Translations under genes and position numbers: made by a program
Notes under the pieces: generated by a model
What the model was told of the DNA's origin: nothing
Databases searched by the model: none
The model's input: the letters and a program-made list of their open reading frames with translations, nothing else
Assembly: GCF_902652985.1 (NCBI RefSeq)
Contig: NC_047017.1
Location: 8,370,001-8,434,000, forward strand
Direction of reading: 5' to 3'
DNA: 64,000 nucleotides
DNA from: Pecten maximus
Taxonomy: Eukaryota
Shown here: positions 14,611 through 26,400 of the stretch, piece by piece
Position numbering within the stretch: the first letter of the stretch is position 1
Layout: every line of letters starts with the position of its first letter

Positions 14611-16884
14611 AACAAGATGTGACTTTGTGATTTTTATCTTAATTTTAATACAAAATTTGACAAAATAAGAGAATTGACTGTTGATGAGTTAAAATCAACA
14701 AATTTGTGTGCAATGCATACAGTACTAAGTAGCATTGCTAACTTATGTCTCATAATACGCATGTATGAAACATATATACTTCTATTGAATATTTCGTACT
14801 GCACTGAAATGACAGCAGCCTTTTATCTGTAAAAATTATACGATTATAGATAAAACTATCCAGGACTGTATAATAAGTCTTAATAATCAATTTGAAAATT
14901 TACAAATATTTTGTGTTCTACCTGGAAAGTAAAAGTGTTTAAACCCCATATAGATCATTTTAAGTTTTGAATTTCAAATATATCAAGAATATTTCTGAAG
15001 AAATATTTGTGATAATTTTTATAAACTTTAGATAGCTGTAAACATGGGTATTTCTTGTTGATGAAGAGAAATAAGTCTTAACACAGTTAAGAAGAACTTG
15101 GCTGTAATTATGAAATATGTTATTAGGGTCTGATATTATAAATTGTGTTGCATTTCTGTGTCGGTAATAAACAAATACACATCTGAGGTAAAACACTGTT
15201 TTCAAATCATTATCCCTCAGATAACATGTAAATGCTGTTTTTGATAATGATATTTTTTATTCGTAATTCTAGCTAATCACTGTCACAGTGGTAACATATA
15301 AATTATTTTAAAATGCTGTACTAAAATTTAATAAAACTGGATTCAAAGTGCTGTACTAAAATTTGATACCAGATTCAGACTTATATTATGTTACATTTAA
15401 TTTAATACTATTTAACACTTACTTGCATGAGATGACATGTTCTCATTGTTAAAGTTTTTGTTTTGTTGGAGGAATTGTGTGTCCAAGATAAACAATCACT
15501 AATATCATATATATCAGACAATTTGCCCATGCCTTGTAACAAGCCCACGCCTGGTAACAAGCCCCTCCATGTCTATTGCAGATAGTAAAATGTTAACAAA
15601 TGCTACTAAATTTCCTTCAGTAAGTCGGGTCTAGACCTACTTTGGATAAAACTTTGAGTGACACCCAACCCCTGGGCTTGTTATGGATATGGCTGATCAG
15701 TGCAGACATCTTTTGTATGACTATATTAGGAATAAAACAAATTAATGAATTTTTACCAAACATGATTAGTAGAATGGAAACACATTTACATAAAAACTTT
15801 TACCAATATATTTCACTTTGACTGTACCCTTTAAATTTGATGACCTTGACTTCTGAACATTATAAAAATAGTAGCATGTGTCCACTTCAACTGGACACAG
15901 CTCGACTGCATGGAAAAGAAGAACATTGCATATTGTATACAAGGGTGGTAAAGCATCAGTATTTATGAGTAAAAAGCATGTCCGATTCTGATGACAAGAT
16001 GCATCATATGATGGTGTGTCACTGTCTTATTAATCCATTTATCAATGAGATAGAAAGAAATGAATGAATGCTAATGTAGCTCCCTAGCCAAGTAAAAATA
16101 TTGAGAATGCTCTCAACTTTTCCACCCGAACTCCAATCTCTTTTCAATGGTTGCCCTATTTTCATGATCAGAGGTCCCTAGTGAAAGTAAAGGAATTTCC
16201 TTATTAAGTTGAGAAATATTTAACTAGGATCAGTGGTGAGTTCTGTTAGCAGTAAATGCACATGATCAGGAGATGAAAACTTCGCACTGAAGTAAACAAA
16301 AAATCATTTGAGATCCATGCTGCTGGAAATTTAGTGATGATCTTTGAACACAATATAAAGTATACCTGAAAGTAGGATATGTACAGCAGGGTAATTTATA
16401 CCAATATATTTCATATATATATGTGTATCAAGATGAACATTTTCAAAGTGAGATTTTATGCGACCTATTGACTAGAGGAGTAAGCTGTCAAATGAACAGG
16501 ACACATTTGGGGTCTAGTGAAATTTGATATTCCAACATTTTCTGAGAAATAAACTTCAGCTAACTTCAACGGTCATATCCATCTTGAAAAGAGAGAAGCC
16601 AAATTTTCTTGATTGGAATGATTGATCATATACACTTTCAAATAAATTTTCCTGTACTTATCAAATATATTATGGGATATTTTTTGCTCAAAAACATTTA
16701 AATGCAGGTCAAATCTATGACGTTATCACTCCTGTTAAGTTAATATAGCTGCATTTCAGTTGGGAAGTTTTATCCTTTGTTGACAACTCTGAGTGTAATA
16801 TTAGACAAATTTATCTCCGTACAATTGCTACATTCTGTAGCTATAGCAGCCTTGAGAATAAGATTTGTGACAGCCTTTAGTCTG

Positions 16885-17310
16885 CTCACTGTATTGTCTA
16901 AAATAACTTGATAGCTCTCATTATATGTAGAAACTACACTGTATTGTCTGAAATAATCTGATAGCTCTCAATGTATGTAGAAACTACACTGCACTATCTG
17001 AAATCACCTGCAAGCTGATAGCTCTCAATATATGTAGAAATTATACTGTATTGTCTGAAATCAACTGATAGCTCTCAATATTTATAGACACTACACTGTA
17101 TTGTCTGAAATCACCTGATTGGTCTAAGTATATGTAGAAACTACACTGTATTGTCTGAAACCACCTGATAGCTCTCAATGTATGTAGAAATTACACTGTA
17201 TTGTCTGAAATCACCTGATAGCTCTCAATATATATAGAAACTACACTGTATTGTCTGAAACCACCTGATAGCTCTCAATATACTCAGTATGTAGAAATTA
17301 CACTGTATTG
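16885..17310. repeat. Minisatellite, 50-bp unit CTACACTGTATTGTCTGAAATCACCTGATAGCTCTCAATATATGTAGAAA, ~8 copies; probably in or near the BRMS1L 3' UTR
   Basis: 50-bp periodicity (17091, 17141, 17191, 17241). Confidence 0.9.
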
Positions 17311-17471
17311 AACACAAAACTGAAAATCCATGGAAGGAAGTAAGACATTCTCATCCACGCATGGAAACCACAACCATGTCATTTTTTCCACATCTATATG
17401 TGATGCTGTTTCTCCACCATGCATGTGCATGACTCCTTTTCTTCTGTAATGTTATACACAGGATATACACG

Positions 17472-20400
17472 TCATTTTTTTCGTATTTCTGGCACAGACG
17501 TCATCTGTATTAGGTCAAATCTCCAACATACACATCCATAAAAGTCATATCTTTGATATGAACCTCTTGCCAAGTCTCCGAACAACATGTCATGAGCCAA
17601 GACCGTTTCCTGAAAAATGAAAAACAAGTGAAAATTGTACATTGTATATAATGGTAAGTGATATATACATTATGTATATGAGTATGATCATAGTGCATTA
17701 TGGGTACACTTGACAGTCCAGATCTTTCCTACAAGGAACTGGATTGTTTGTAATATTTGGTCATAGATATATATGGTGAACAAAACAACATAGGCAATGA
17801 ATGTATTCACAAGCTTGTTCAGAAAGTGACAGCTCTGATGTCAGATTCTGATCTAAAATACAAGATAAGATTTGAATCAATATGTAAATATCAACACTGT
17901 TTTTGTATACCATACCTTTTTATATCAATGCACTATTTAAAACCTTCAAAACTCGATATCTGGTTTCCGCTTCTGATTTTGTTTTAAAGCCTGAAAAAGA
18001 TGAAGCATTTCATTAGTAACAAACACTCCATTTTGTTTGGGTTTATTTTGCTTAATGTCCTATTAACAGCCAGGGTCATTTAAGGACATGCTAGGTTTAG
18101 GAGGTAAATGAAAGCCCAAGTATCCGGAGAAAAACCATGGGCCTACATTCAGTACCAGGCAACTGCCCCACGTGGGATTCAAACTCGCAACCCTAGAGGT
18201 GGAAGGCTAGTGATAAAGTGTCGGGACACCTTAACCACTCAGCCACTGTGGCCCTTCTCCATTTTGTATGTCACACAAAATTATTGTCCTTTATTAACTG
18301 TAAACAATCATAATTTACTGGAGAGGATGTCAGTATTGTATATATAATACCGAAATAATAACGAAAAGAAGTATTGAATATTCAGAAATCAATTAATATT
18401 TTTACGATCAGAATAAAAATTAATCACATAAACTCACCTTTTTAATAGCTGTCCAGTCTTCAATAATATCAACATCTTTTAACAGGTATACAATATATGG
18501 ACCTGGGAAAGTTAAGGAAAAGTAAAGACAGAAATTGTATTTACACTACAGGTATACAATATATGGACCTGGGAGAATTGGTAAAACACACAGAAATTGT
18601 ATTTATACTACAGGTATACAATATATGGACCTGGGAAAGTTAAGGAAAAGTAAAAGACAGAAATTGTATTTACACTACAGGTATACAATATATGGACCTG
18701 GGAGAATTGGTAAAACACACAGAAATTGTATTTATACTACAGGTATACAATATATGGACCTGGGAGAGTTAAGGAACAGTAAAACAGACAGAAACTGTAT
18801 TTATACTACAGGTATACAATATATGGACCTGGGAGAATTAGTAAAACAGAAAGAAATTGTATTTACACTACAGGTATACAATATATGGACCTGGGAGAAT
18901 TGGTAAAACACACAGAAACTGTATTTACACTACAGGTATACAATATATGGACCTCGCACAGGTATATAATATATGGACCACACACAGGTATACAATATAT
19001 GGACCTCACACAGGTATATAATATATGGACCTCGCACAGGTATATAATATATGGACCTCACACAGGTATATAATATATGGACCTCACACAGGTATATAAT
19101 ATATGGACCTCACACAGGTATACAATATATGGACCTCACACAGGTATATAATATATGGACCTCGCACAGGTATATAATATATGGACCTCACACAGGTATA
19201 TAATATATGGACCTCACACAGGTATATAATATATGGACCTCACACAGGTATACAATATATGGACCTCACACAGGTATATAATATATGGACCTCACACAGG
19301 TATATAATATATGGACCTCACACAGGTATATAATATATGGACCTCACACAGGTATATAATATATGGACCTGGGATAATTAAGTAAAACAGACAGAAACTG
19401 TGTTGATAGTCTTTGGAAATACAGGGAAGATAAAGGTTTAAATGAGAATCTTTAAGCTAAGAGAAACTGGGAAATAACAGATTTTTTAGCTTCAATTTGG
19501 CATTCATGATAGTAGAAATGTGATCATGAGATTGAGGAATGTTTGTAATCAAAATGTTTTAAACACAGAGTTTTATACAAGAAAATTAATGTCTCTTTTC
19601 ATGGTATCAAAAAGATGAATGGGTTCAAATTTTAAATTGGCAATGAAAACAACAAACAAAATGCTATCCACGAATGCTAATGTCAAATGATATACAACAA
19701 TGCTAATGACAAATAATATACAACAATGCTATACAACAATGCTAATGACAAATAATATACAACAATGCTATCCAACAATGCTAATGTCAAATGATATACA
19801 ACGATACTATACTATTCAAACTAGTTCAACAATATTCAAAACAAACATCACCAATTAGCACTTTCAACTATTATTTATGGGCTAAACAACTGCTATTATC
19901 AGTTATCAAAATATTCATCAATATCAAGGTTTACCATATCTACAATTCAAAACTGAAAAGTAAATGGAAACGGCTATCTATGGATACAAGACATAACTAT
20001 TGAATTGACTTAACAAACAACTTCACAAATTATTGTTAAAAGGATACCAGCCACTGTCACCGGTTTCTTTCGTCTGTCAGGGTTTGACGGGTCTTTATTC
20101 TTTTTATTTTTCTTCATGAACTGTGATTCATTCCATAAATCTGAAGCATCAAGCACAGTAATAGATGTATATGTAGTAATTATAGCAACTGAACAAGAAG
20201 AAAACAGTAAGATGGCTTAAAAATTCAATACGTTGATTTATTATTTCTAAAGAAAACTAGAAAAATAAATTATTTCATACTTGGAGAGAGCCAAGTAAGT
20301 TGCAACATATGTGTGTATTTCCTTTGATGGTTTTTCAATGAAATGTGACGTCACAAATCTCAATGTGAAGCAAAGAATGAGAATTTTCATAAAAAATGTA

Positions 20401-23400
20401 AATTTTGATTTAGTCTAATGGGGACAACTCAAATCGAAATAGACAGGCAATATAGTTACACACACTCACTCAGCCTCAGAATGTAGTCATTCAAATATTT
20501 GAAAGAAACTACTGGAACTTTTAGGACCAGATTCTGCTAATGGATTGATAAATATTGAACAAACAGATAAATCTTCAATACACAGACAATTAACAGATGA
20601 ATATTCTATAATACGACAATTTGATTCCAGCATAAACTGGAACTATAAATTTTACAGCAAAACATTTTTTATCTGCAGAACTGAATTTTAAATTGTTTTC
20701 CTTTTCTTTTTTGATTCTTTAACCAAATTAACATCACTAATCAGTACATACAATTAATATTTATGGAACAAATAATTGCTGTTATCAGTTATCAAAATGT
20801 TCATCAATTAAGTGGGTTTCATATTAGACTTGAAGCTCAGAGAATTCTTCAATTTTACCTTTGTCAAGTGAAGTAAGAGTAAAAAACACATCTACATAAC
20901 CAAGAACCAAGTTATCTACATCGTACATACTGATGTGTTTTCATAAGTCTGCTACTCCCATCATATAAATGATAGAATCTTGGACATGAGTTTACCAATA
21001 TTTCTTTGCATTAACATAATTAAGACATTATCACAGAATACCTGATGAAATGTCTATGTTATGTCTATCTTCCTCTAGTCGACGGATCTTCTCCTCCAAG
21101 TCCTGCTTGACAGAGTCAAATAATATATCCTTCTCACTCTGAAAAATATAGAAAAAATCAATTTAATGAAATAGAAAATCAGAAATCTGAATATCAAGCA
21201 TTAATCAATGTTTTTTTTATTATAACAAGGCATCGTAAACGATACAAATCCCCTCGCGTGCTAACACATGAACTCTGACGCAAAATGGGGGGTGGGGATA
21301 TTGCAGGACATTGAAATAACATCAGTTGTCATTTGCACTGAACTGCAATAGACATGGATGGGCTTATGATCAGGCATGGGCTCATTGCCAGATAAATATG
21401 GTATATATTGTTATGCATTCAACAGTATCTGGTTATGCATCACACTAGCAACTTCATTTCCTGATAGTTATTATATGTGTGTATCTAAATGCATATATAA
21501 GCATTTTCGAGGTATTGCCATGCTGGACCAACATATGAAGTTTGGTCAGGATCAATTCAAAAATGAAGTCGCAACAACGCTGACAAAGATTTTCTATAAA
21601 TAGTAACGTGACCTTGACCTTAACCTTGGCGCCCTGAAACACGTTCTTGTTTGAGGTATTGCCATGCTTGACCCATATATGAAGTTTGGTCAGGATCCAT
21701 TCAAAAATGAAGTCACATTACAGCGCTGACAAAGATTTTCTATAAATAGTCACGGTGACATTGGCCTTGACCTTGGCGCCCTAAAACACGAACTCGTACG
21801 AGGTATTCCCATGCTGGACCCATATATAAAGTTTGGTCAGGATCCGTTCAGAAATGAAGTCGCAAGAGTGCTGACAAAGATTTTCTATAAATAGTAATGA
21901 TGACCTTAACCTTGACCTTTGCACCCTGAAACACGAGCTCGTTCGAGGATATTCCAATGCTGGACCCATATATGAAGTTTGGTCAGGATCCGTTCAAAAA
22001 TGAAGTCGCAAGAGCGCCAACAAAGATTTTCTATAAATAGTAACGCTGACCTTGACACCCTGAAACACAATCTGGTGCGAGGTATTCCCATGCTGGACCC
22101 ATATATGAAGTTTGGTCAGAATCCGTTCAAAAATAAAGTCGCAAGAGCGCTGACAAAAAGTGAACATACGTACGTACGTACGTATGAACGGAACGCTATA
22201 TCCCCCCTCCCCGACTTTCTTTGCGAGGAGATCATAAATGAAGAGTATAATGACTACCATACAACATAATGGAAGTGCATAAGACAACAAAATTATATAA
22301 TCTCCAATGTCAAAAGCATTCTGGTATTGTTTCAGTATTCTTGTCACTTGTCTAGTTCTCTTTTTTTTGGAAAGTGACAATACCTGGATTTACCTGGATT
22401 TACCTGGCAGGTGTCCATGATGATACAGAAGATGCTCATCTGCCAGGAACACCTGGTCTTATTTTCCATGTATTTTTTCCAATTTTGAGTTAATTTTTAA
22501 CTTTCTTTTGAATTACTTTTAGGACAATTTTCAGGTTATTTTAATTTAAACTTTCAACTATTTAAAATTCTTACTGATTAAATAGAGTTGGGTAGGCTGG
22601 TGGATTAAATACATGATGGGAAGACTTACCTCCATATTCTGTCTGGTGGATCAAGTGTATGATGGGTAGACTTACCTCCATATTCTGTCTGGTGGATCGT
22701 TTGATTCGAGTGTATGATGGGTAGACTTACCTCCATATTATGTCTGGTGAATTAAGTGCATGATGAGTAGACTTACCTCCATATTCTGTCTGGTGGATCA
22801 AGTATATGACGGGTAGACTTACCTCCACATTCTGCCTGGTGGATCAAGTGCATGATGGGTAGACTTACCTCCATATTCTGTCTGGTGGACCAAGTATAAG
22901 ATGGGTAGACTTACCTCCATATTCTGTCCAGTGGATCAAGTATATGATGGGTAGACTTACCTCAATATTATGTCTGGTGAATTAAGTGTATGATGTGTAG
23001 ACTTACCTCCATATTCTGTCTGGTGGATCAAGTATATGACGGGTAGACTTACCTCCACATTCTGCCTGGTGGATCAAGTGCATGATGGGTAGACTTACCT
23101 CCATATTCTGTCTGGTGGACCAAGTATAAGATGGGTAGACTTACCTCCATATTCTGTCCAGTGGATCAAGTATATGATGGGTAGACTTACCTCAATATTA
23201 TGTCTGGTGAATTAAGTGTATGATGTGTAGACTTACCTCCATATTCTGTCTGGTGGCTAGTTCTTCACTCTCAAATTTATTTTGGATACAAATTTTTCTG
23301 TATTCTTTAAGAATTCCTGAAATTATGCAAATAAATTGTTACTTGATAGGGTCATCAACAAATGCATATTACTGGTAGTCTGGACTGATAAGTGTGATAA

Positions 23401-26400
23401 TCATTTCTCTTCTTCAAATACCAAAATCACCTGTATATGTAAATGGAAACTTTATCTATTTTACAACAATCACAAAACCAGTTATATAAACTGATATAAT
23501 CATGCTTGTTGGCCCAAAGGAAATGTGCTAGGGGTATTCCTGTGGAAGGAAACCTGTGTATCTGCAGATCATGCCATATTCTTTATTAATGTAAACTACC
23601 GGTAATACACTCTTTATGTCGTATTATTTACCAATTAAACACTTTAATCAAAGGATAAGAAAAAGCCTGGATTCTCTAGATCTGCCCTTTTTAACTCTTA
23701 CCCCGACACCTGTATCCCTCAGGTTCCCACACTTTTGAATCCTTTCCCGACACCTGTATCCCCCGGGGCCCAGTCTTTTTGAATCCTCAACCTACAAATA
23801 TATCCCCCAGGTTCCCACCCTTTTTGAATTTTTATCCTACACATGTATCCCCCCCGTTTCCTACCCTTTTGAATCCTTACCCTACATCTGCAGCCATCAG
23901 GTCCCCACCCTTTTGAATCCCCTTCACCTGTATCCACCGGGACCCAGTCCTTTTAAATCCTCAACCTACACATACCATATCCCCCAGGTCCCTCCCTTTT
24001 GGAATTTTTATCCTACTCATGTATCCTCCAGGTTCCAACCCTTTTGAATCCTTACCCTACATTTGCAGCCATCAGGTCCCCACCCTTTTTAACCCTTACC
24101 CCTCACCTTTATCCACCGGGGGCCCCACCCTTTTGAATCATTACCCTACATCTACATCCCCCAACCTTTTAAATCTGTACCCGACACCTGTATCCCTCAG
24201 GTCCCCACCCTTTTAAATCCTTATCTGACACCTGTATCCCCAGTTCCCCACCCTTTTCAATCCTTACCTGATACCTGTATCCATCAGGTCCCCACTCTTT
24301 AAATCCTTACCTGACACCTGTATCCGTATCCTCATGTTATCCTGGAGCTCAGCCAGAGGATTAAGGTACTCTATAGCTTTGCCGGCCTTGACTTCCTCAA
24401 GTTTGGCTTCATACTGCCCCATCCTCTCCTTGTAAAGTCTAGGAACACAAAGATGATATTTAGTTTTATTGACGATATCCTCTGTGTCGACTAAGCCTAC
24501 TTATTTTCAATAAATCATGATATGGTACATGTATATTTATGGTCAGTTTGAACAAATTAAAGTTAAATAAATTTTGTTGAACCTTTGGTATCTTAATATA
24601 CCAAATTATGCTTCAGAAAATAATTGCAAGTTCAAAATATCAGAGTCAATAAATTATGCCCAAATATATAATCCTCAATACTCTAGGGTTACACCATATA
24701 TGGAAGCGAATGTATATACCAGGCTTGCGAGATCTAAGTTGAAGATTTTTTTAATATTAAACTAGTGTACATGATAGCTAATAAAACAAGAATTTTTAAC
24801 AGAAGTAAAAGCTGTCTTTAATTGGAACCTAATTATAGAGACATTATAAATATATGTGTGTGTTTGTCTACACAGAGTGACTTTTTTATTATCTGATGCT
24901 GTACATCAATATGTATATTTCATAATGTTCATACTTACTTATATTTAAGATCTGATGGAGGTTTGAGTAATTTGATAAGCAGGTCAACGTTCAAATAATC
25001 AGAAATGTATACTGTACATATATATCAAAATTGGAATTAGAGCACTTCAGATTAAAATGTTCACATGACAAATGATAGTTGATACAAAACCTTTTTAAAT
25101 TATGAAAGGACATGTACAATGTAAACCAAAGTATGTTTATAATGACTGTGTTAAAATTTTGTATACTAGCTAGAGTTATAGAATATGGAGCTAATCATAC
25201 ACAACTTTCAGTTACAAATCAAAACTTGTCCGATTGTTATCCATGAATACATACTGTTCTTTAAGATCTGTGAATTGTCTTTCCAAATCAATCATATCAT
25301 CCAGGAATTCATTTTTACGCCTCTCACATTCTTCTTCATCCAGTTCTGAAATTGAAAATCATGAGTTATGGATAAAATCATCTCATTGGGACATTCAGCA
25401 TTCAAACAAAGAGAGATTACATCACTAGAGTAGATATATATCACTTACTTATCAATCCAACATCAGCTATTGGAACAAAAAGCTCACAATTTATATGATT
25501 ATATGTTATAAATTTCCAATTAAATTAATTTAATGTGCATGTCATTTTCAGTTTTGTTTGTTTTATTTGTTTAACATCCTATTATATATTAACAGCCAGG
25601 GTCATTTAAGGACATGCCAGGTTTTGGAGGTGGAGGAAAGCCGGAGTTAAAATAGTCGGAGTACCCAGAGAAAAACCACCGGCCTACGGTCAGTACCTGG
25701 CAACTGCCCCACGTAGGTTTAGAACTCGTAACCCAGAGGAGGAGGGCTAGTGATAAAGTGTCGGGACACCTTAACCACTCGGCCACTGCTGCCCCCTCAT
25801 TTTCCGTACTTATCAGACATTCATGTAATGCAAACAATGGGGAAAATGCCTGTAGTGGGTTCAATCACTAGTACTTGTGTACAGGTGGAGATATGACACT
25901 ATATTACTAGCCTATTATAAGGTGTTTGGATTTTTCAAGTTCATGAAATGAGAATAAAAATTGGAGTGCTTGTGTTGGATTTAATAATACACTACTTGTA
26001 CATGTGACTATAGGTGTCTTCCACATTCCACATGAGTCTTCTTACATTTCTTTTCCTTTTTGCATATATATATACCCAGGAATTATCGAGCCTCCCTTTA
26101 GCCTATAGTGGTAGGATGCATATATATATACCCAGGAATTATCGAGCCTCCCTTTAGCCTATATATAGTGGTAGGATGCATATATATGCTTGCCTTGAGA
26201 GCAAGAGATCGCCAGTTTGAGCCCCAACACAAGCAGGATATTTTTCATTACTTCTTCCTATATATATTACAGATTTGGTGCCCTTGACCTCTCCAAGTGT
26301 ACCTGTAAGCTATAGGAGAGTGAGAAGCCTCCTTGAAGCTACATGGGTTATGGTTGTCTTCGGGGATGAAGACTTTGTTGATGGAGTGAGGAATGTAGAG

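What the first reader, a model, noticed from the sequence alone, without database searches (positions are those of the whole stretch)
18483..20047. Minor (U12) intron whose branch point + acceptor + exon start is tandemly amplified, each long decoy ending in an immediate stop
Seen: the BRMS1L intron 20047-18503 has the U12 donor GTATCCTTT and branch point TTCCTTAAC. Upstream of the true acceptor lie about 23 copies of the exon start, nearly all preceded by AG. Two of them (18630 and 18759) keep an intact TTCCTTAAC at the same spacing as the real site; the others have lost it. Splicing to a long-unit decoy reads G-P-Y-I-V-Y-L-TAG, because CTG TTA of the true exon is CTG TAG in the copies. The transcript therefore meets two complete U12 acceptors before the productive one. 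Established: U12 introns are rare, depend heavily on the branch-point sequence, and are often rate-limiting. Inference: this is a natural test of U12 3' splice-site choice and possibly a built-in poison-acceptor rheostat for a Sin3-HDAC subunit.
Basis: partly seen in the sequence, partly recalled or inferred. Interest (0 to 1): 0.8.

Follow-up and report, generated by a model that had tools for sequence, protein, structure and literature searches.

The report
Minor intron acceptor copied by minisatellite
An ancient minor-spliceosome (U12) intron in a scallop BRMS1-like gene has had its branch site, acceptor and exon start copied many times by an intron minisatellite of a known kind ("mirage"), yet the assembled mRNA uses only the last, genuine copy, so this is probably a tolerated accident and not a splicing control.

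Summary
On the minus strand, intron 20047-18503 starts with CTG|GTATCCTTT. It has TTCCTTAAC 10 nt before the acceptor cccag|GTCC at 18502. Upstream lie 23 more copies of the first 20-21 exon bases, 22 of them behind AG. Only the copies at 18759 and 18630 keep the branch site at the same spacing. All seven long-unit copies read GPYIVYL-TAG.

The intron is a genuine U12-type intron:
- Its donor is the only GTATCCTTT in 64 kb.
- mRNA contigs from four studies join 20048 to 18502.
- The genome encodes U11, U12 and U6atac.
- Published tables list a minor intron in mouse and human BRMS1 (same CTG|GTATCCTTT) and BRMS1L.

The regulatory reading has no support. No decoy junction appeared, although contigs cannot show rare forms. 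The array is young. Tandem arrays cover 24% of the window. The same gene has two more arrays that copy an exon end plus its donor. Such arrays, which cover an exon border, are known from amphioxus as "mirage" minisatellites and do not disturb splicing. Earlier notes of this scan report many in this genome, on other DNA.

What remains is a modest natural test of how the minor spliceosome chooses among three identical acceptor modules.

The parts
20048..20140 (-). Exon 6 of the BRMS1-like gene (…[31 protein letters not shown] + G); ends in phase 1.
   Evidence: tblastn to P0148, P0145 and P0027; RNA joints 21042|20140 and 20048|18502 in 4 runs.
20039..20047 (-). U12-type 5' splice site GTATCCTTT (GT-AG subtype).
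   Evidence: Only occurrence in 64 kb on both strands. It sits exactly at the RNA-defined donor. Together with the three preceding exon bases it forms the 12-mer CTGGTATCCTTT, the same 12-mer that Olthof 2019 lists for human BRMS1.
18503..20047 (-). U12-type intron, 1545 nt, phase 1.
   Evidence: Joint skipping 1545 nt with GT..AG ends in one ~1.2-kb mRNA contig in each of 4 runs from 4 studies.
19642..19812 (-). Unrelated 39-bp minisatellite inside the same intron.
   Evidence: TRF.
18953..19400 (-). A diverged oldest unit, with the degenerate branch-site-like TTACTTAAT 8 nt before cccag|GTCC at 19368, followed by the 26-bp array. The array has 16 units of GTCCATATATTATATACCTGTGTGAG, each an exon-start copy behind AG (one behind TG), with no branch site and no immediate stop.
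   Evidence: TRF period 26, 16.9 copies, 96% matches.
18503..18952 (-). Long-unit array. Each of the 7 units is 62-69 bp: the last ~45 nt of the intron plus the first 21 nt of exon 7. Units alternate between A-type (branch site kept) and B-type (branch site lost), giving a 129-bp higher-order repeat.
   Evidence: TRF periods 62 and 129; unit alignment.
18737..18776 (-). Decoy acceptor module 1: TTCCTTAAC (18768-18776), AG, exon-start copy from 18759, in-frame TAG at 18739-18737.
18608..18647 (-). Decoy acceptor module 2: TTCCTTAAC (18639-18647), AG, exon-start copy from 18630, in-frame TAG at 18610-18608. Over the 45 nt before the acceptor it differs from the true module by one 1-nt indel.
18503..18519 (-). 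True branch site TTCCTTAAC (18511-18519) and acceptor TTTCCCAG; the branch A lies 10 nt from the junction.
   Evidence: RNA joint.
18438..18502 (-). Exon 7 (65 nt; [21 protein letters not shown]), followed by the strong U2-type donor AAG|GTGAGT.
   Evidence: tblastn; RNA joints 20048|18502 and 18438|17990.
17916..17990 (-). Exon 8 ([14 protein letters not shown], stop at 17948-17946). A further intron (17915-17610) lies in the 3' UTR.
   Evidence: RNA joints; translation.
22597..23256 (-). Second exon-edge array in the same gene: the last ~20 nt of exon 4 plus GAG|GTAAGT, repeated 13 more times (46-bp units).
23685..24325 (-). Third exon-edge array: the end of exon 3 (GGATACAGGTGTCAG|GTAAGG...) repeated as a diverged array.

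Best explanation
Intron 6 of a single-copy BRMS1-like (Sds3-family, Sin3-HDAC subunit) gene is an ancient U12-type intron of the GT-AG subtype. It sits at the same position and phase as the minor intron of vertebrate BRMS1 and BRMS1L. A 66-bp piece, made of the last ~45 intron bases (including the U12 branch site) and the first 21 exon bases, was tandemly duplicated. It expanded in two modes: a 26-bp derivative and a 129-bp two-unit repeat. This gave a 'mirage' minisatellite that ends at the genuine acceptor. Two copies are still complete U12 acceptor modules. In steady-state mRNA only the last, genuine acceptor is seen. Inferred, not shown: the genuine site wins because only it is followed by real exon sequence and, 65 nt on, by a strong U2-type donor (exon definition). 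The other AG-preceded copies have no intact branch site and so are not expected to be recognised by the minor spliceosome. Any transcript spliced to 18759 or 18630 carries a TAG about 170 nt or more before the next exon junction and would be removed by nonsense-mediated decay. On this reading the array is a tolerated by-product of a very minisatellite-rich genome and not an evolved control.
For: Structure.
U12 identity:
- The only GTATCCTTT and the only three TTCCTTAAC in 64 kb lie at this intron's ends.
- Four RNA runs from four studies each hold one mRNA contig joining 20048|18502 with GT..AG ends.
- The genome has U12, U6atac and U11 genes above Rfam cut-offs. U12 carries the GUAAGGAA box and U11 starts AAAAAGGGC.
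Orthology:
- Olthof 2019 lists minor introns in mouse and human BRMS1 (CTG|GTATCCTTT/C) and BRMS1L (CAG|ATATCCTTT).
- Younis 2013 treats human BRMS1L as a minor-intron gene.
- Mis-modelled proteins from Capitella, Pleurodeles and Gambusia read S/T-D-I-L at this junction, as expected for G|ATATCCTT.
Gene identity: exon-by-exon tblastn to homologues that hit Pfam Sds3 and are named BRMS1-like; single locus in the genome.
Neutral-array reading:
- 24.5% of the window and 30% of the gene is tandem array.
- Two further arrays in this gene copy an exon end plus its donor.
- No close copy of the array exists elsewhere in the genome.
- Arrays that cover an exon border ('mirages') are described in amphioxus and do not disturb splicing.
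- Earlier notes report many such arrays in this genome with silent decoys.
Exon-definition help for U12 introns is reviewed in PMC8329584.
Against: Decoy use was not measured. Only Logan contigs were available, and they drop rare isoforms. A decoy junction shares its first 21 exon bases with the true one, so it is hard to see. All four runs show low depth on 18534-18714 (array words), while the 26-bp array and the unique intron stretch up to 19619 show none. This could be unspliced precursor whose repeated words pass a depth threshold, or it could be decoy-extended exons. Nothing in the local sequence tells the module at 18630 from the real one, so some use is mechanistically expected. Reviews call U12 3' site choice error-prone. 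Array age and polymorphism were not tested in other individuals or species.
Confidence: 0.75

Rival explanations
1. Constitutive leak. The two complete upstream modules capture an appreciable fraction (say 10% or more) of minor-spliceosome events because they are transcribed first and are locally identical to the real site. The products are destroyed by NMD, so the array lowers BRMS1-like output as an unregulated cost.
For: The modules at 18759 and 18630 have the same branch site, spacing, AG and 21 exon bases as the real site. Predicted U12 pairing is 10-11 bp for all three (my reading of the U12 sequence). U12 3' site choice follows the branch site and is error-prone. Array words are present in all four RNA runs.
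Against: No contig covers 18503-18533, which a decoy-extended exon must contain (bin arithmetic). Amphioxus mirages give normal mRNA.
Confidence: 0.15
2. Evolved poison-acceptor rheostat. The cell tunes the share of decoy versus productive U12 splicing to set the level of this Sin3-HDAC subunit.
For: The architecture would allow it: complete decoys, an immediate stop, and an NMD-competent position. Minor introns can be rate-limiting, and human BRMS1L responds to the U6atac level. A precedent for duplicated minor-spliceosome signals used in regulation exists in the USSE.
Against: No decoy isoform was seen. The array is young and homogenised. Most copies have lost the branch site. The same gene carries two analogous arrays at U2-type donors, and the genome carries many more. 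This points to a mutational process and not to a device specific to this intron. No conservation data could be obtained.
Confidence: 0.06
3. Assembly artefact. The array, or its copy number, is a mis-assembly of a shorter repeat.
For: Tandem arrays are error-prone in assemblies. No independent DNA reads were laid.
Against: The ordered higher-order structure has unit-specific variants. One RNA-run contig carries a copy-specific variant of the long units (18606 T>C in X1). The flanks are confirmed by mRNA joints. Many analogous arrays occur in the same assembly.
Confidence: 0.03

Closest known systems
'Mirage' minisatellites of amphioxus (Adh3, troponin C, globins BflGb6/9, PGBD5), as described in PMC3087553 and PMC3902484
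   Same: Tandem repeats whose unit spans an intron/exon border. The array lies in the intron and ends at the genuine border. Many units keep AG or GT signals. The mRNA is spliced normally. Both 5' and 3' borders can be affected, and this gene has both.
   Different: Here the host is a mollusc. The copied signal is a U12-type branch site plus acceptor, so each intact unit is a complete recognition module for the minor spliceosome. A derived 26-bp sub-array and a 129-bp higher-order repeat coexist. Length instability was not tested here.
Conserved minor (U12-type) intron of vertebrate BRMS1 and BRMS1L (MIDB tables of Olthof et al. 2019, PMC6717393; Younis et al. 2013, PMC3728624)
   Same: Same gene family. 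The donor context implies the same position and phase (…xCT G|GTATCCTT in BRMS1; …CA G|ATATCCTT in BRMS1L). The 12-mer donor is the same as the one listed for human BRMS1. The branch site is of the TCCTTRAC type.
   Different: The listed vertebrate branch sites are TTCCTTGAC and GACCTTGAC. No tandem duplication of the acceptor is reported there. I could not compare orthologous DNA directly.
USSE (U11 snRNP-binding splicing enhancer) of SNRNP48 and RNPC3
   Same: Duplicated minor-spliceosome recognition signals inside a gene that lead to unproductive isoforms (NMD or nuclear retention).
   Different: The USSE is a tandem pair of U12-type 5' splice sites. It is deeply conserved and acts by activating an upstream U2-type acceptor. 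Here the donor is single, the duplicated part is the branch site and acceptor, the array is young, and no function is shown.
AS-NMD through alternative 3' splice sites or poison exons
   Same: An upstream acceptor would add sequence with an early in-frame stop well before the next exon junction.
   Different: No alternative junction has been observed and no conservation is known. The decoys arose by repeat expansion.

Membership tests
U12-type (minor-class) intron, GT-AG subtype | 5' splice site matching |RTATCCTTT | tested here: met
   CTG|GTATCCTTT at 20047-20039. It is the only match in 64 kb on both strands.
U12-type (minor-class) intron, GT-AG subtype | Branch site TCCTTRAC close to the 3' splice site (optimum 11-13 nt) | tested here: met
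   TTCCTTAAC at 18511-18519. The branch A is 10 nt (second A) or 11 nt (first A) from the junction. This is at the short end of the working range.
U12-type (minor-class) intron, GT-AG subtype | Intron really removed at these borders | tested here: met
   Joint 20048|18502, skipping 1545 nt, in one mRNA contig in each of 4 runs from 4 studies.
U12-type (minor-class) intron, GT-AG subtype | Organism has the minor spliceosome | tested here: met
   U12 (107 bits), U6atac (97.5 bits) and U11 (98 bits) genes in G000, with canonical recognition boxes. U4atac was not searched.
U12-type (minor-class) intron, GT-AG subtype | Orthologous intron is U12-type in other animals | tested here: met
   Olthof 2019 supplement lists mouse and human BRMS1 and BRMS1L minor introns with matching donor context. 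S/T-DIL read-through footprints occur in an annelid, a newt and a fish model.
U12-type (minor-class) intron, GT-AG subtype | Splicing depends on U11/U12/U4atac/U6atac; classifier score (intronIC) | not testable with these tools
   Needs snRNA knock-down or morpholino work, or a run of intronIC on an annotated genome.
'Mirage' minisatellite | Tandem unit spans an exon/intron border and the array abuts the genuine border | tested here: met
   The unit is ~45 nt of intron end plus 21 nt of exon start. The last unit is the real acceptor.
'Mirage' minisatellite | Regular mRNA splicing is not disturbed | tested here: met
   Only the true junction was assembled in 4 runs. Rare forms are not excluded.
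'Mirage' minisatellite | Length instability or polymorphism of the array | not tested
   No DNA reads were laid. A neighbouring 3'-UTR array does vary by 307 nt in run X1.
Regulated unproductive splicing (AS-NMD poison acceptor) | Alternative junction is actually used | tested here: inconclusive
   No decoy joint among contigs. Contigs drop rare variants, and the junction words are shared for 21 nt.
Regulated unproductive splicing (AS-NMD poison acceptor) | Premature stop more than 50 nt upstream of a later exon junction | tested here: met
   The TAGs at 18739-18737 and 18610-18608 lie about 300 and 170 nt before the 18438|17990 junction.
Regulated unproductive splicing (AS-NMD poison acceptor) | Conservation and regulation of the alternative site | not testable with these tools
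   No related genomes were reachable and no raw reads were available.
USSE-type element | Tandem U12-type 5' splice sites | tested here: not met
   A single GTATCCTTT in the window.

The most novel reading that the evidence does not exclude
The two complete upstream U12 acceptor modules are used co-transcriptionally at a meaningful and variable rate. Output of this Sin3-HDAC subunit would then be set by the minor spliceosome's choice among three identical branch-site/acceptor modules plus NMD. This would make the locus a natural assay showing that U12 3' site choice is decided by exon definition from the downstream U2-type donor and not by the branch site alone.
Probability: 0.12. Interest if true: 0.6.

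Novelty: new member of a known kind. Interest (0 to 1): 0.4.

Why it matters
U12 introns are rare, conserved and thought to be recognised mainly through their rigid donor and branch-site sequences. Here nature has placed three indistinguishable branch-site/acceptor modules in a row behind one U12 donor, and the mature mRNA still uses only the last one. That makes the locus a ready-made substrate for asking what, beyond the branch site, fixes the U12 3' splice site. Candidates are exon definition, exonic enhancers, and kinetic order combined with NMD clean-up.

More broadly, three arrays that copy an exon edge in one gene, together with many more noted in this genome, show that 'mirage' minisatellites are not confined to amphioxus. 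They can hit both spliceosome systems. This matters for gene prediction in repeat-rich invertebrate genomes and for models of intron gain by duplication of AG|GT sites.

Tried and rejected
- Pfam on single exons gave no hit. PDB sequence search with the exon 3 frame gave nothing relevant. Pfam Sds3 searched over the whole genome missed this locus because the exons are too short. Gene identity was therefore taken from a HMMER search with the exon 3 frame, followed by Pfam and source names of the hits and exon-by-exon tblastn.
I used published tables and read-through footprints in mis-modelled proteins instead.
- The Moyer 2020 supplement that is held has no BRMS1 entry.
- I asked whether the array is a genome-wide satellite that landed here. 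It is not. The only matches elsewhere are 62-72% hits, and the three of those arrays I inspected have other periods (25, 28, 49 bp) and share a TATATACCTGT-like core. The repeated 21 nt encode the conserved GPYIVYL.
- I considered a U2-type intron and rejected it on the donor and branch-site evidence. I considered a USSE-like element and rejected it because there is a single donor motif.
- Rfam and tRNA scans of 16000-21400 and 17900-18420 found nothing.
All protein work was done exon by exon.
- No contig that I took for human was handled. Only short motifs printed in a paper's table are cited.
- Read laying could be run once and returned contigs only, so junction counting was impossible.

Full report
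**What is in the sequence.** All features below are on the minus strand.
- Exon 6 of the gene ends ...CCGGTGACAGTGGCTG at 20048. The intron begins GTATCCTTTTAAC.
- The intron ends ...CTTTACTTTTCCTTAACTTTCCCAG. Exon 7 begins GTCCATATATTGTATACCTGTTAAAAG at 18502.
- A pattern scan finds 24 copies of GTCCATATATT[AG]TATACCTG between 19368 and 18502. That is the true exon start plus 23 decoys. Twenty-two decoys follow AG and one follows TG.
- Tandem Repeats Finder gives two arrays that abut each other. One has a 26-bp period (16.9 copies, 96% matches, 18932-19370). The other has 62-69-bp units that form a 129-bp higher-order repeat (93% matches, 18482-18954).
- A long unit is the last ~45 nt of the intron plus the first 21 nt of the exon. 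Units alternate between an A-type that keeps TTCCTTAAC and a B-type that has TTTTACCAATTC instead.
- TTCCTTAAC occurs exactly three times in the 64-kb window on both strands: before the acceptors at 18759, 18630 and 18502. In each case the branch adenosine lies 10 nt from the junction.
- In the phase set by exon 6, all seven long-unit copies read G-P-Y-I-V-Y-L-TAG. The real exon reads [22 protein letters not shown].

**The gene.**
- Single exons are too short for Pfam. A full HMMER search with the frame that contains exon 3 found 218 relatives. The full-length ones hit Pfam Sds3. Their sources name them breast cancer metastasis-suppressor 1-like protein in Capitella, Ptychodera, Darwinula, Cordylochernes and Pleurodeles.
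- tblastn of four of them maps exons 1-7 on the minus strand between 27629 and 18438.
- The locus is the only one of its kind in the 918-Mb genome.

**RNA evidence.**
- Each run holds one ~1.2-kb mRNA contig with four joints: 21042|20140, 20048|18502, 18438|17990 and 17916|17609. All have GT..AG ends on the minus strand.
- So the intron is removed exactly at the proposed donor and at the last, genuine acceptor.
- No joint to 18630, 18759 or any other copy was listed.
- This does not exclude rare decoy use, for two reasons. Contigs drop minor variants. A decoy junction also shares 21 exon bases with the true one, so its distinguishing words start only at the end of a 31-mer.
- All four runs show low depth on 18534-18714. 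They show none on the 26-bp array or on the unique intron stretch up to 19619, and none on 18503-18533. The depth of the bin 18353-18533 equals that of the exon 7 contig alone.
- The simplest reading is unspliced precursor or carry-over DNA whose repeated words pass the assembler's depth threshold. Decoy-extended exons are not excluded.

**Is it U12-type?**
- The only GTATCCTTT in the window is this donor.
- The branch site is a perfect TTCCTTAAC at the short end of the accepted distance. The optimum is 11-13 nt according to the Turunen review.
- The genome encodes U12 (two genes), U6atac (four) and U11 (one), all far above Rfam's cut-offs. U12 carries GUAAGGAA, which pairs with UUCCUUA-C with one A bulged. 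U11 starts AAAAAGGGC and U6atac carries AAGGAGAGA.
- The supplement of Olthof et al. 2019 lists a minor intron in mouse and human BRMS1 with donor CTG|GTATCCTTC/T and branch site TTCCTTGAC. It also lists one in BRMS1L with donor CAG|ATATCCTTT.
- The scallop 12-mer CTGGTATCCTTT is identical to the one printed for human BRMS1. The context (xCT G|GT = Ser/Ala-Gly) gives the same codon position and phase.
- Three mis-modelled proteins run into the intron at this very junction. They read S/T-D-I-L, the translation of G|ATATCCTT. They come from an annelid (Capitella), a newt (Pleurodeles) and a fish (Gambusia).
- Younis et al. 2013 treat human BRMS1L as a minor-intron gene.
- The intron is therefore an old, conserved U12 intron. 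In the scallop it is of the GT-AG subtype.
- intronIC itself could not be run.

**What the array is.**
- The array has no close copy elsewhere in the genome. The other matches are 62-72% identical. The three of those arrays that I inspected have other periods and share a TATATACCTGT-like core.
- The repeated 21 nt encode the family's conserved GPYIVYL. So the exon border seeded the array, not the reverse.
- The window is extraordinarily rich in minisatellites: 24.5% of its bases, and 30% of this gene.
- Two further arrays in the same gene also start inside an exon edge. One repeats the end of exon 4 plus GAG|GTAAGT 13 more times. The other is a diverged array of the end of exon 3 plus CAG|GTAAGG.
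- My crude estimate is that about 0.25 such edge-anchored arrays would be expected by chance in this gene, against three seen. This is my own rough arithmetic, not a formal test.
- Earlier notes of this scan led me to the term 'mirage'. I checked the papers. [quoted passage not shown] They are also reported for troponin C, globins and PGBD5. They affect both 5' and 3' borders, show concerted evolution and length instability, and leave the mRNA normal.
- The present array fits that class. The earlier notes also say that the genome is the king scallop and that several such arrays elsewhere in it have silent decoys. I did not verify the species.

**How it most likely works.**
- Shown: the donor, three complete acceptor modules, productive splicing to the last one, and the early stop after each long decoy.
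- Inferred, point 1: the 20 copies without an intact branch site are not expected to be recognised by the minor spliceosome. The donor is also a poor U1 target, so the major spliceosome should not use these copies either.
- Inferred, point 2: the modules at 18759 and 18630 can pair with U12 as well as the real one (10-11 bp by my reading of the U12 gene). Discrimination must therefore come from downstream.
- Inferred, point 3: only the real module is followed by true exon sequence and, 65 nt on, by AAG|GTGAGT. Exon-definition contacts between a downstream U1-bound donor and the U11/U12 complex are the established way in which U12 acceptors are reinforced (review).
- Inferred, point 4: transcripts that do use a decoy would carry a TAG about 170-300 nt before the 18438|17990 junction. 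They should then be removed by nonsense-mediated decay.
- The near identity of module 18630 to the real one (one 1-nt indel) shows that the last duplication is recent. That argues against an old, selected device.

**Verdict.** The U12 call is well supported. The 'rheostat' reading is unsupported and less likely than a tolerated mirage minisatellite. The locus keeps some value as a natural three-module test of U12 3' splice-site choice. Raw reads with and without NMD, lariat mapping and minigenes would settle it.

Noticed in passing
window 22597-23256 and 23685-24325 (minus strand): Two more minisatellites in the same gene start inside an exon edge. One has 13 extra copies of the end of exon 4 plus a perfect GAG|GTAAGT donor. 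The other is a diverged array of the end of exon 3 plus CAG|GTAAGG. That makes three edge-anchored arrays in one gene, against roughly 0.25 expected by my crude estimate. It hints that exon borders seed or anchor minisatellites in this genome.
   Followed up: partly
window ~18046-18254 (intron 7), with a similar sequence near 25589-25864: An interspersed repeat of about 200 nt shows enormous depth in all four RNA runs (summed word depth 10^4 to 10^5), with many loose ends at its borders. ARAGORN finds no tRNA and Rfam finds no match. It is probably a highly transcribed SINE-like element.
   Followed up: partly
window 17916-17990 and 17610-17915: The assembled mRNA ends its reading frame in exon 8 (…[14 protein letters not shown], stop at 17948-17946), 30 nt before a further intron in the 3' UTR. 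The C-terminal domain found in annelid, hemichordate and arthropod BRMS1-like proteins (…ARFxDGKLxY…LQxGKY…) was not found in the window or elsewhere in the genome. The scallop protein therefore resembles the short vertebrate BRMS1 form.
   Followed up: partly
window 16887-17282: A 50-bp minisatellite lies in the 3' UTR. Run X1 has a contig that skips 307 nt of it (16927 to 17235), which suggests a length polymorphism between individuals.
   Followed up: no
G000 C3:35.40 Mb, C3:45.45 Mb, C9:4.05 Mb and about 20 other places (L002-L008): Long minisatellites with periods of 25, 28 and 49 bp, in the three arrays inspected, share a TATATACCTGT / ACAGGTGTATAATATA-like core with the 26-bp unit here at 62-72% identity. 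This may be a common core motif of this genome's minisatellites, or it may be AT-rich chance similarity.
   Followed up: partly
proteins P0027 (Capitella), P0057 (Pleurodeles), P0112 (Gambusia), P0067 (Cordylochernes): Public gene models of BRMS1-like genes are wrong exactly at the U12 intron. They either read through it (S/T-DIL…) or skip the GPYIVY exon start. The likely reason is that the intron is of the AT-AC subtype in those species.
   Followed up: partly
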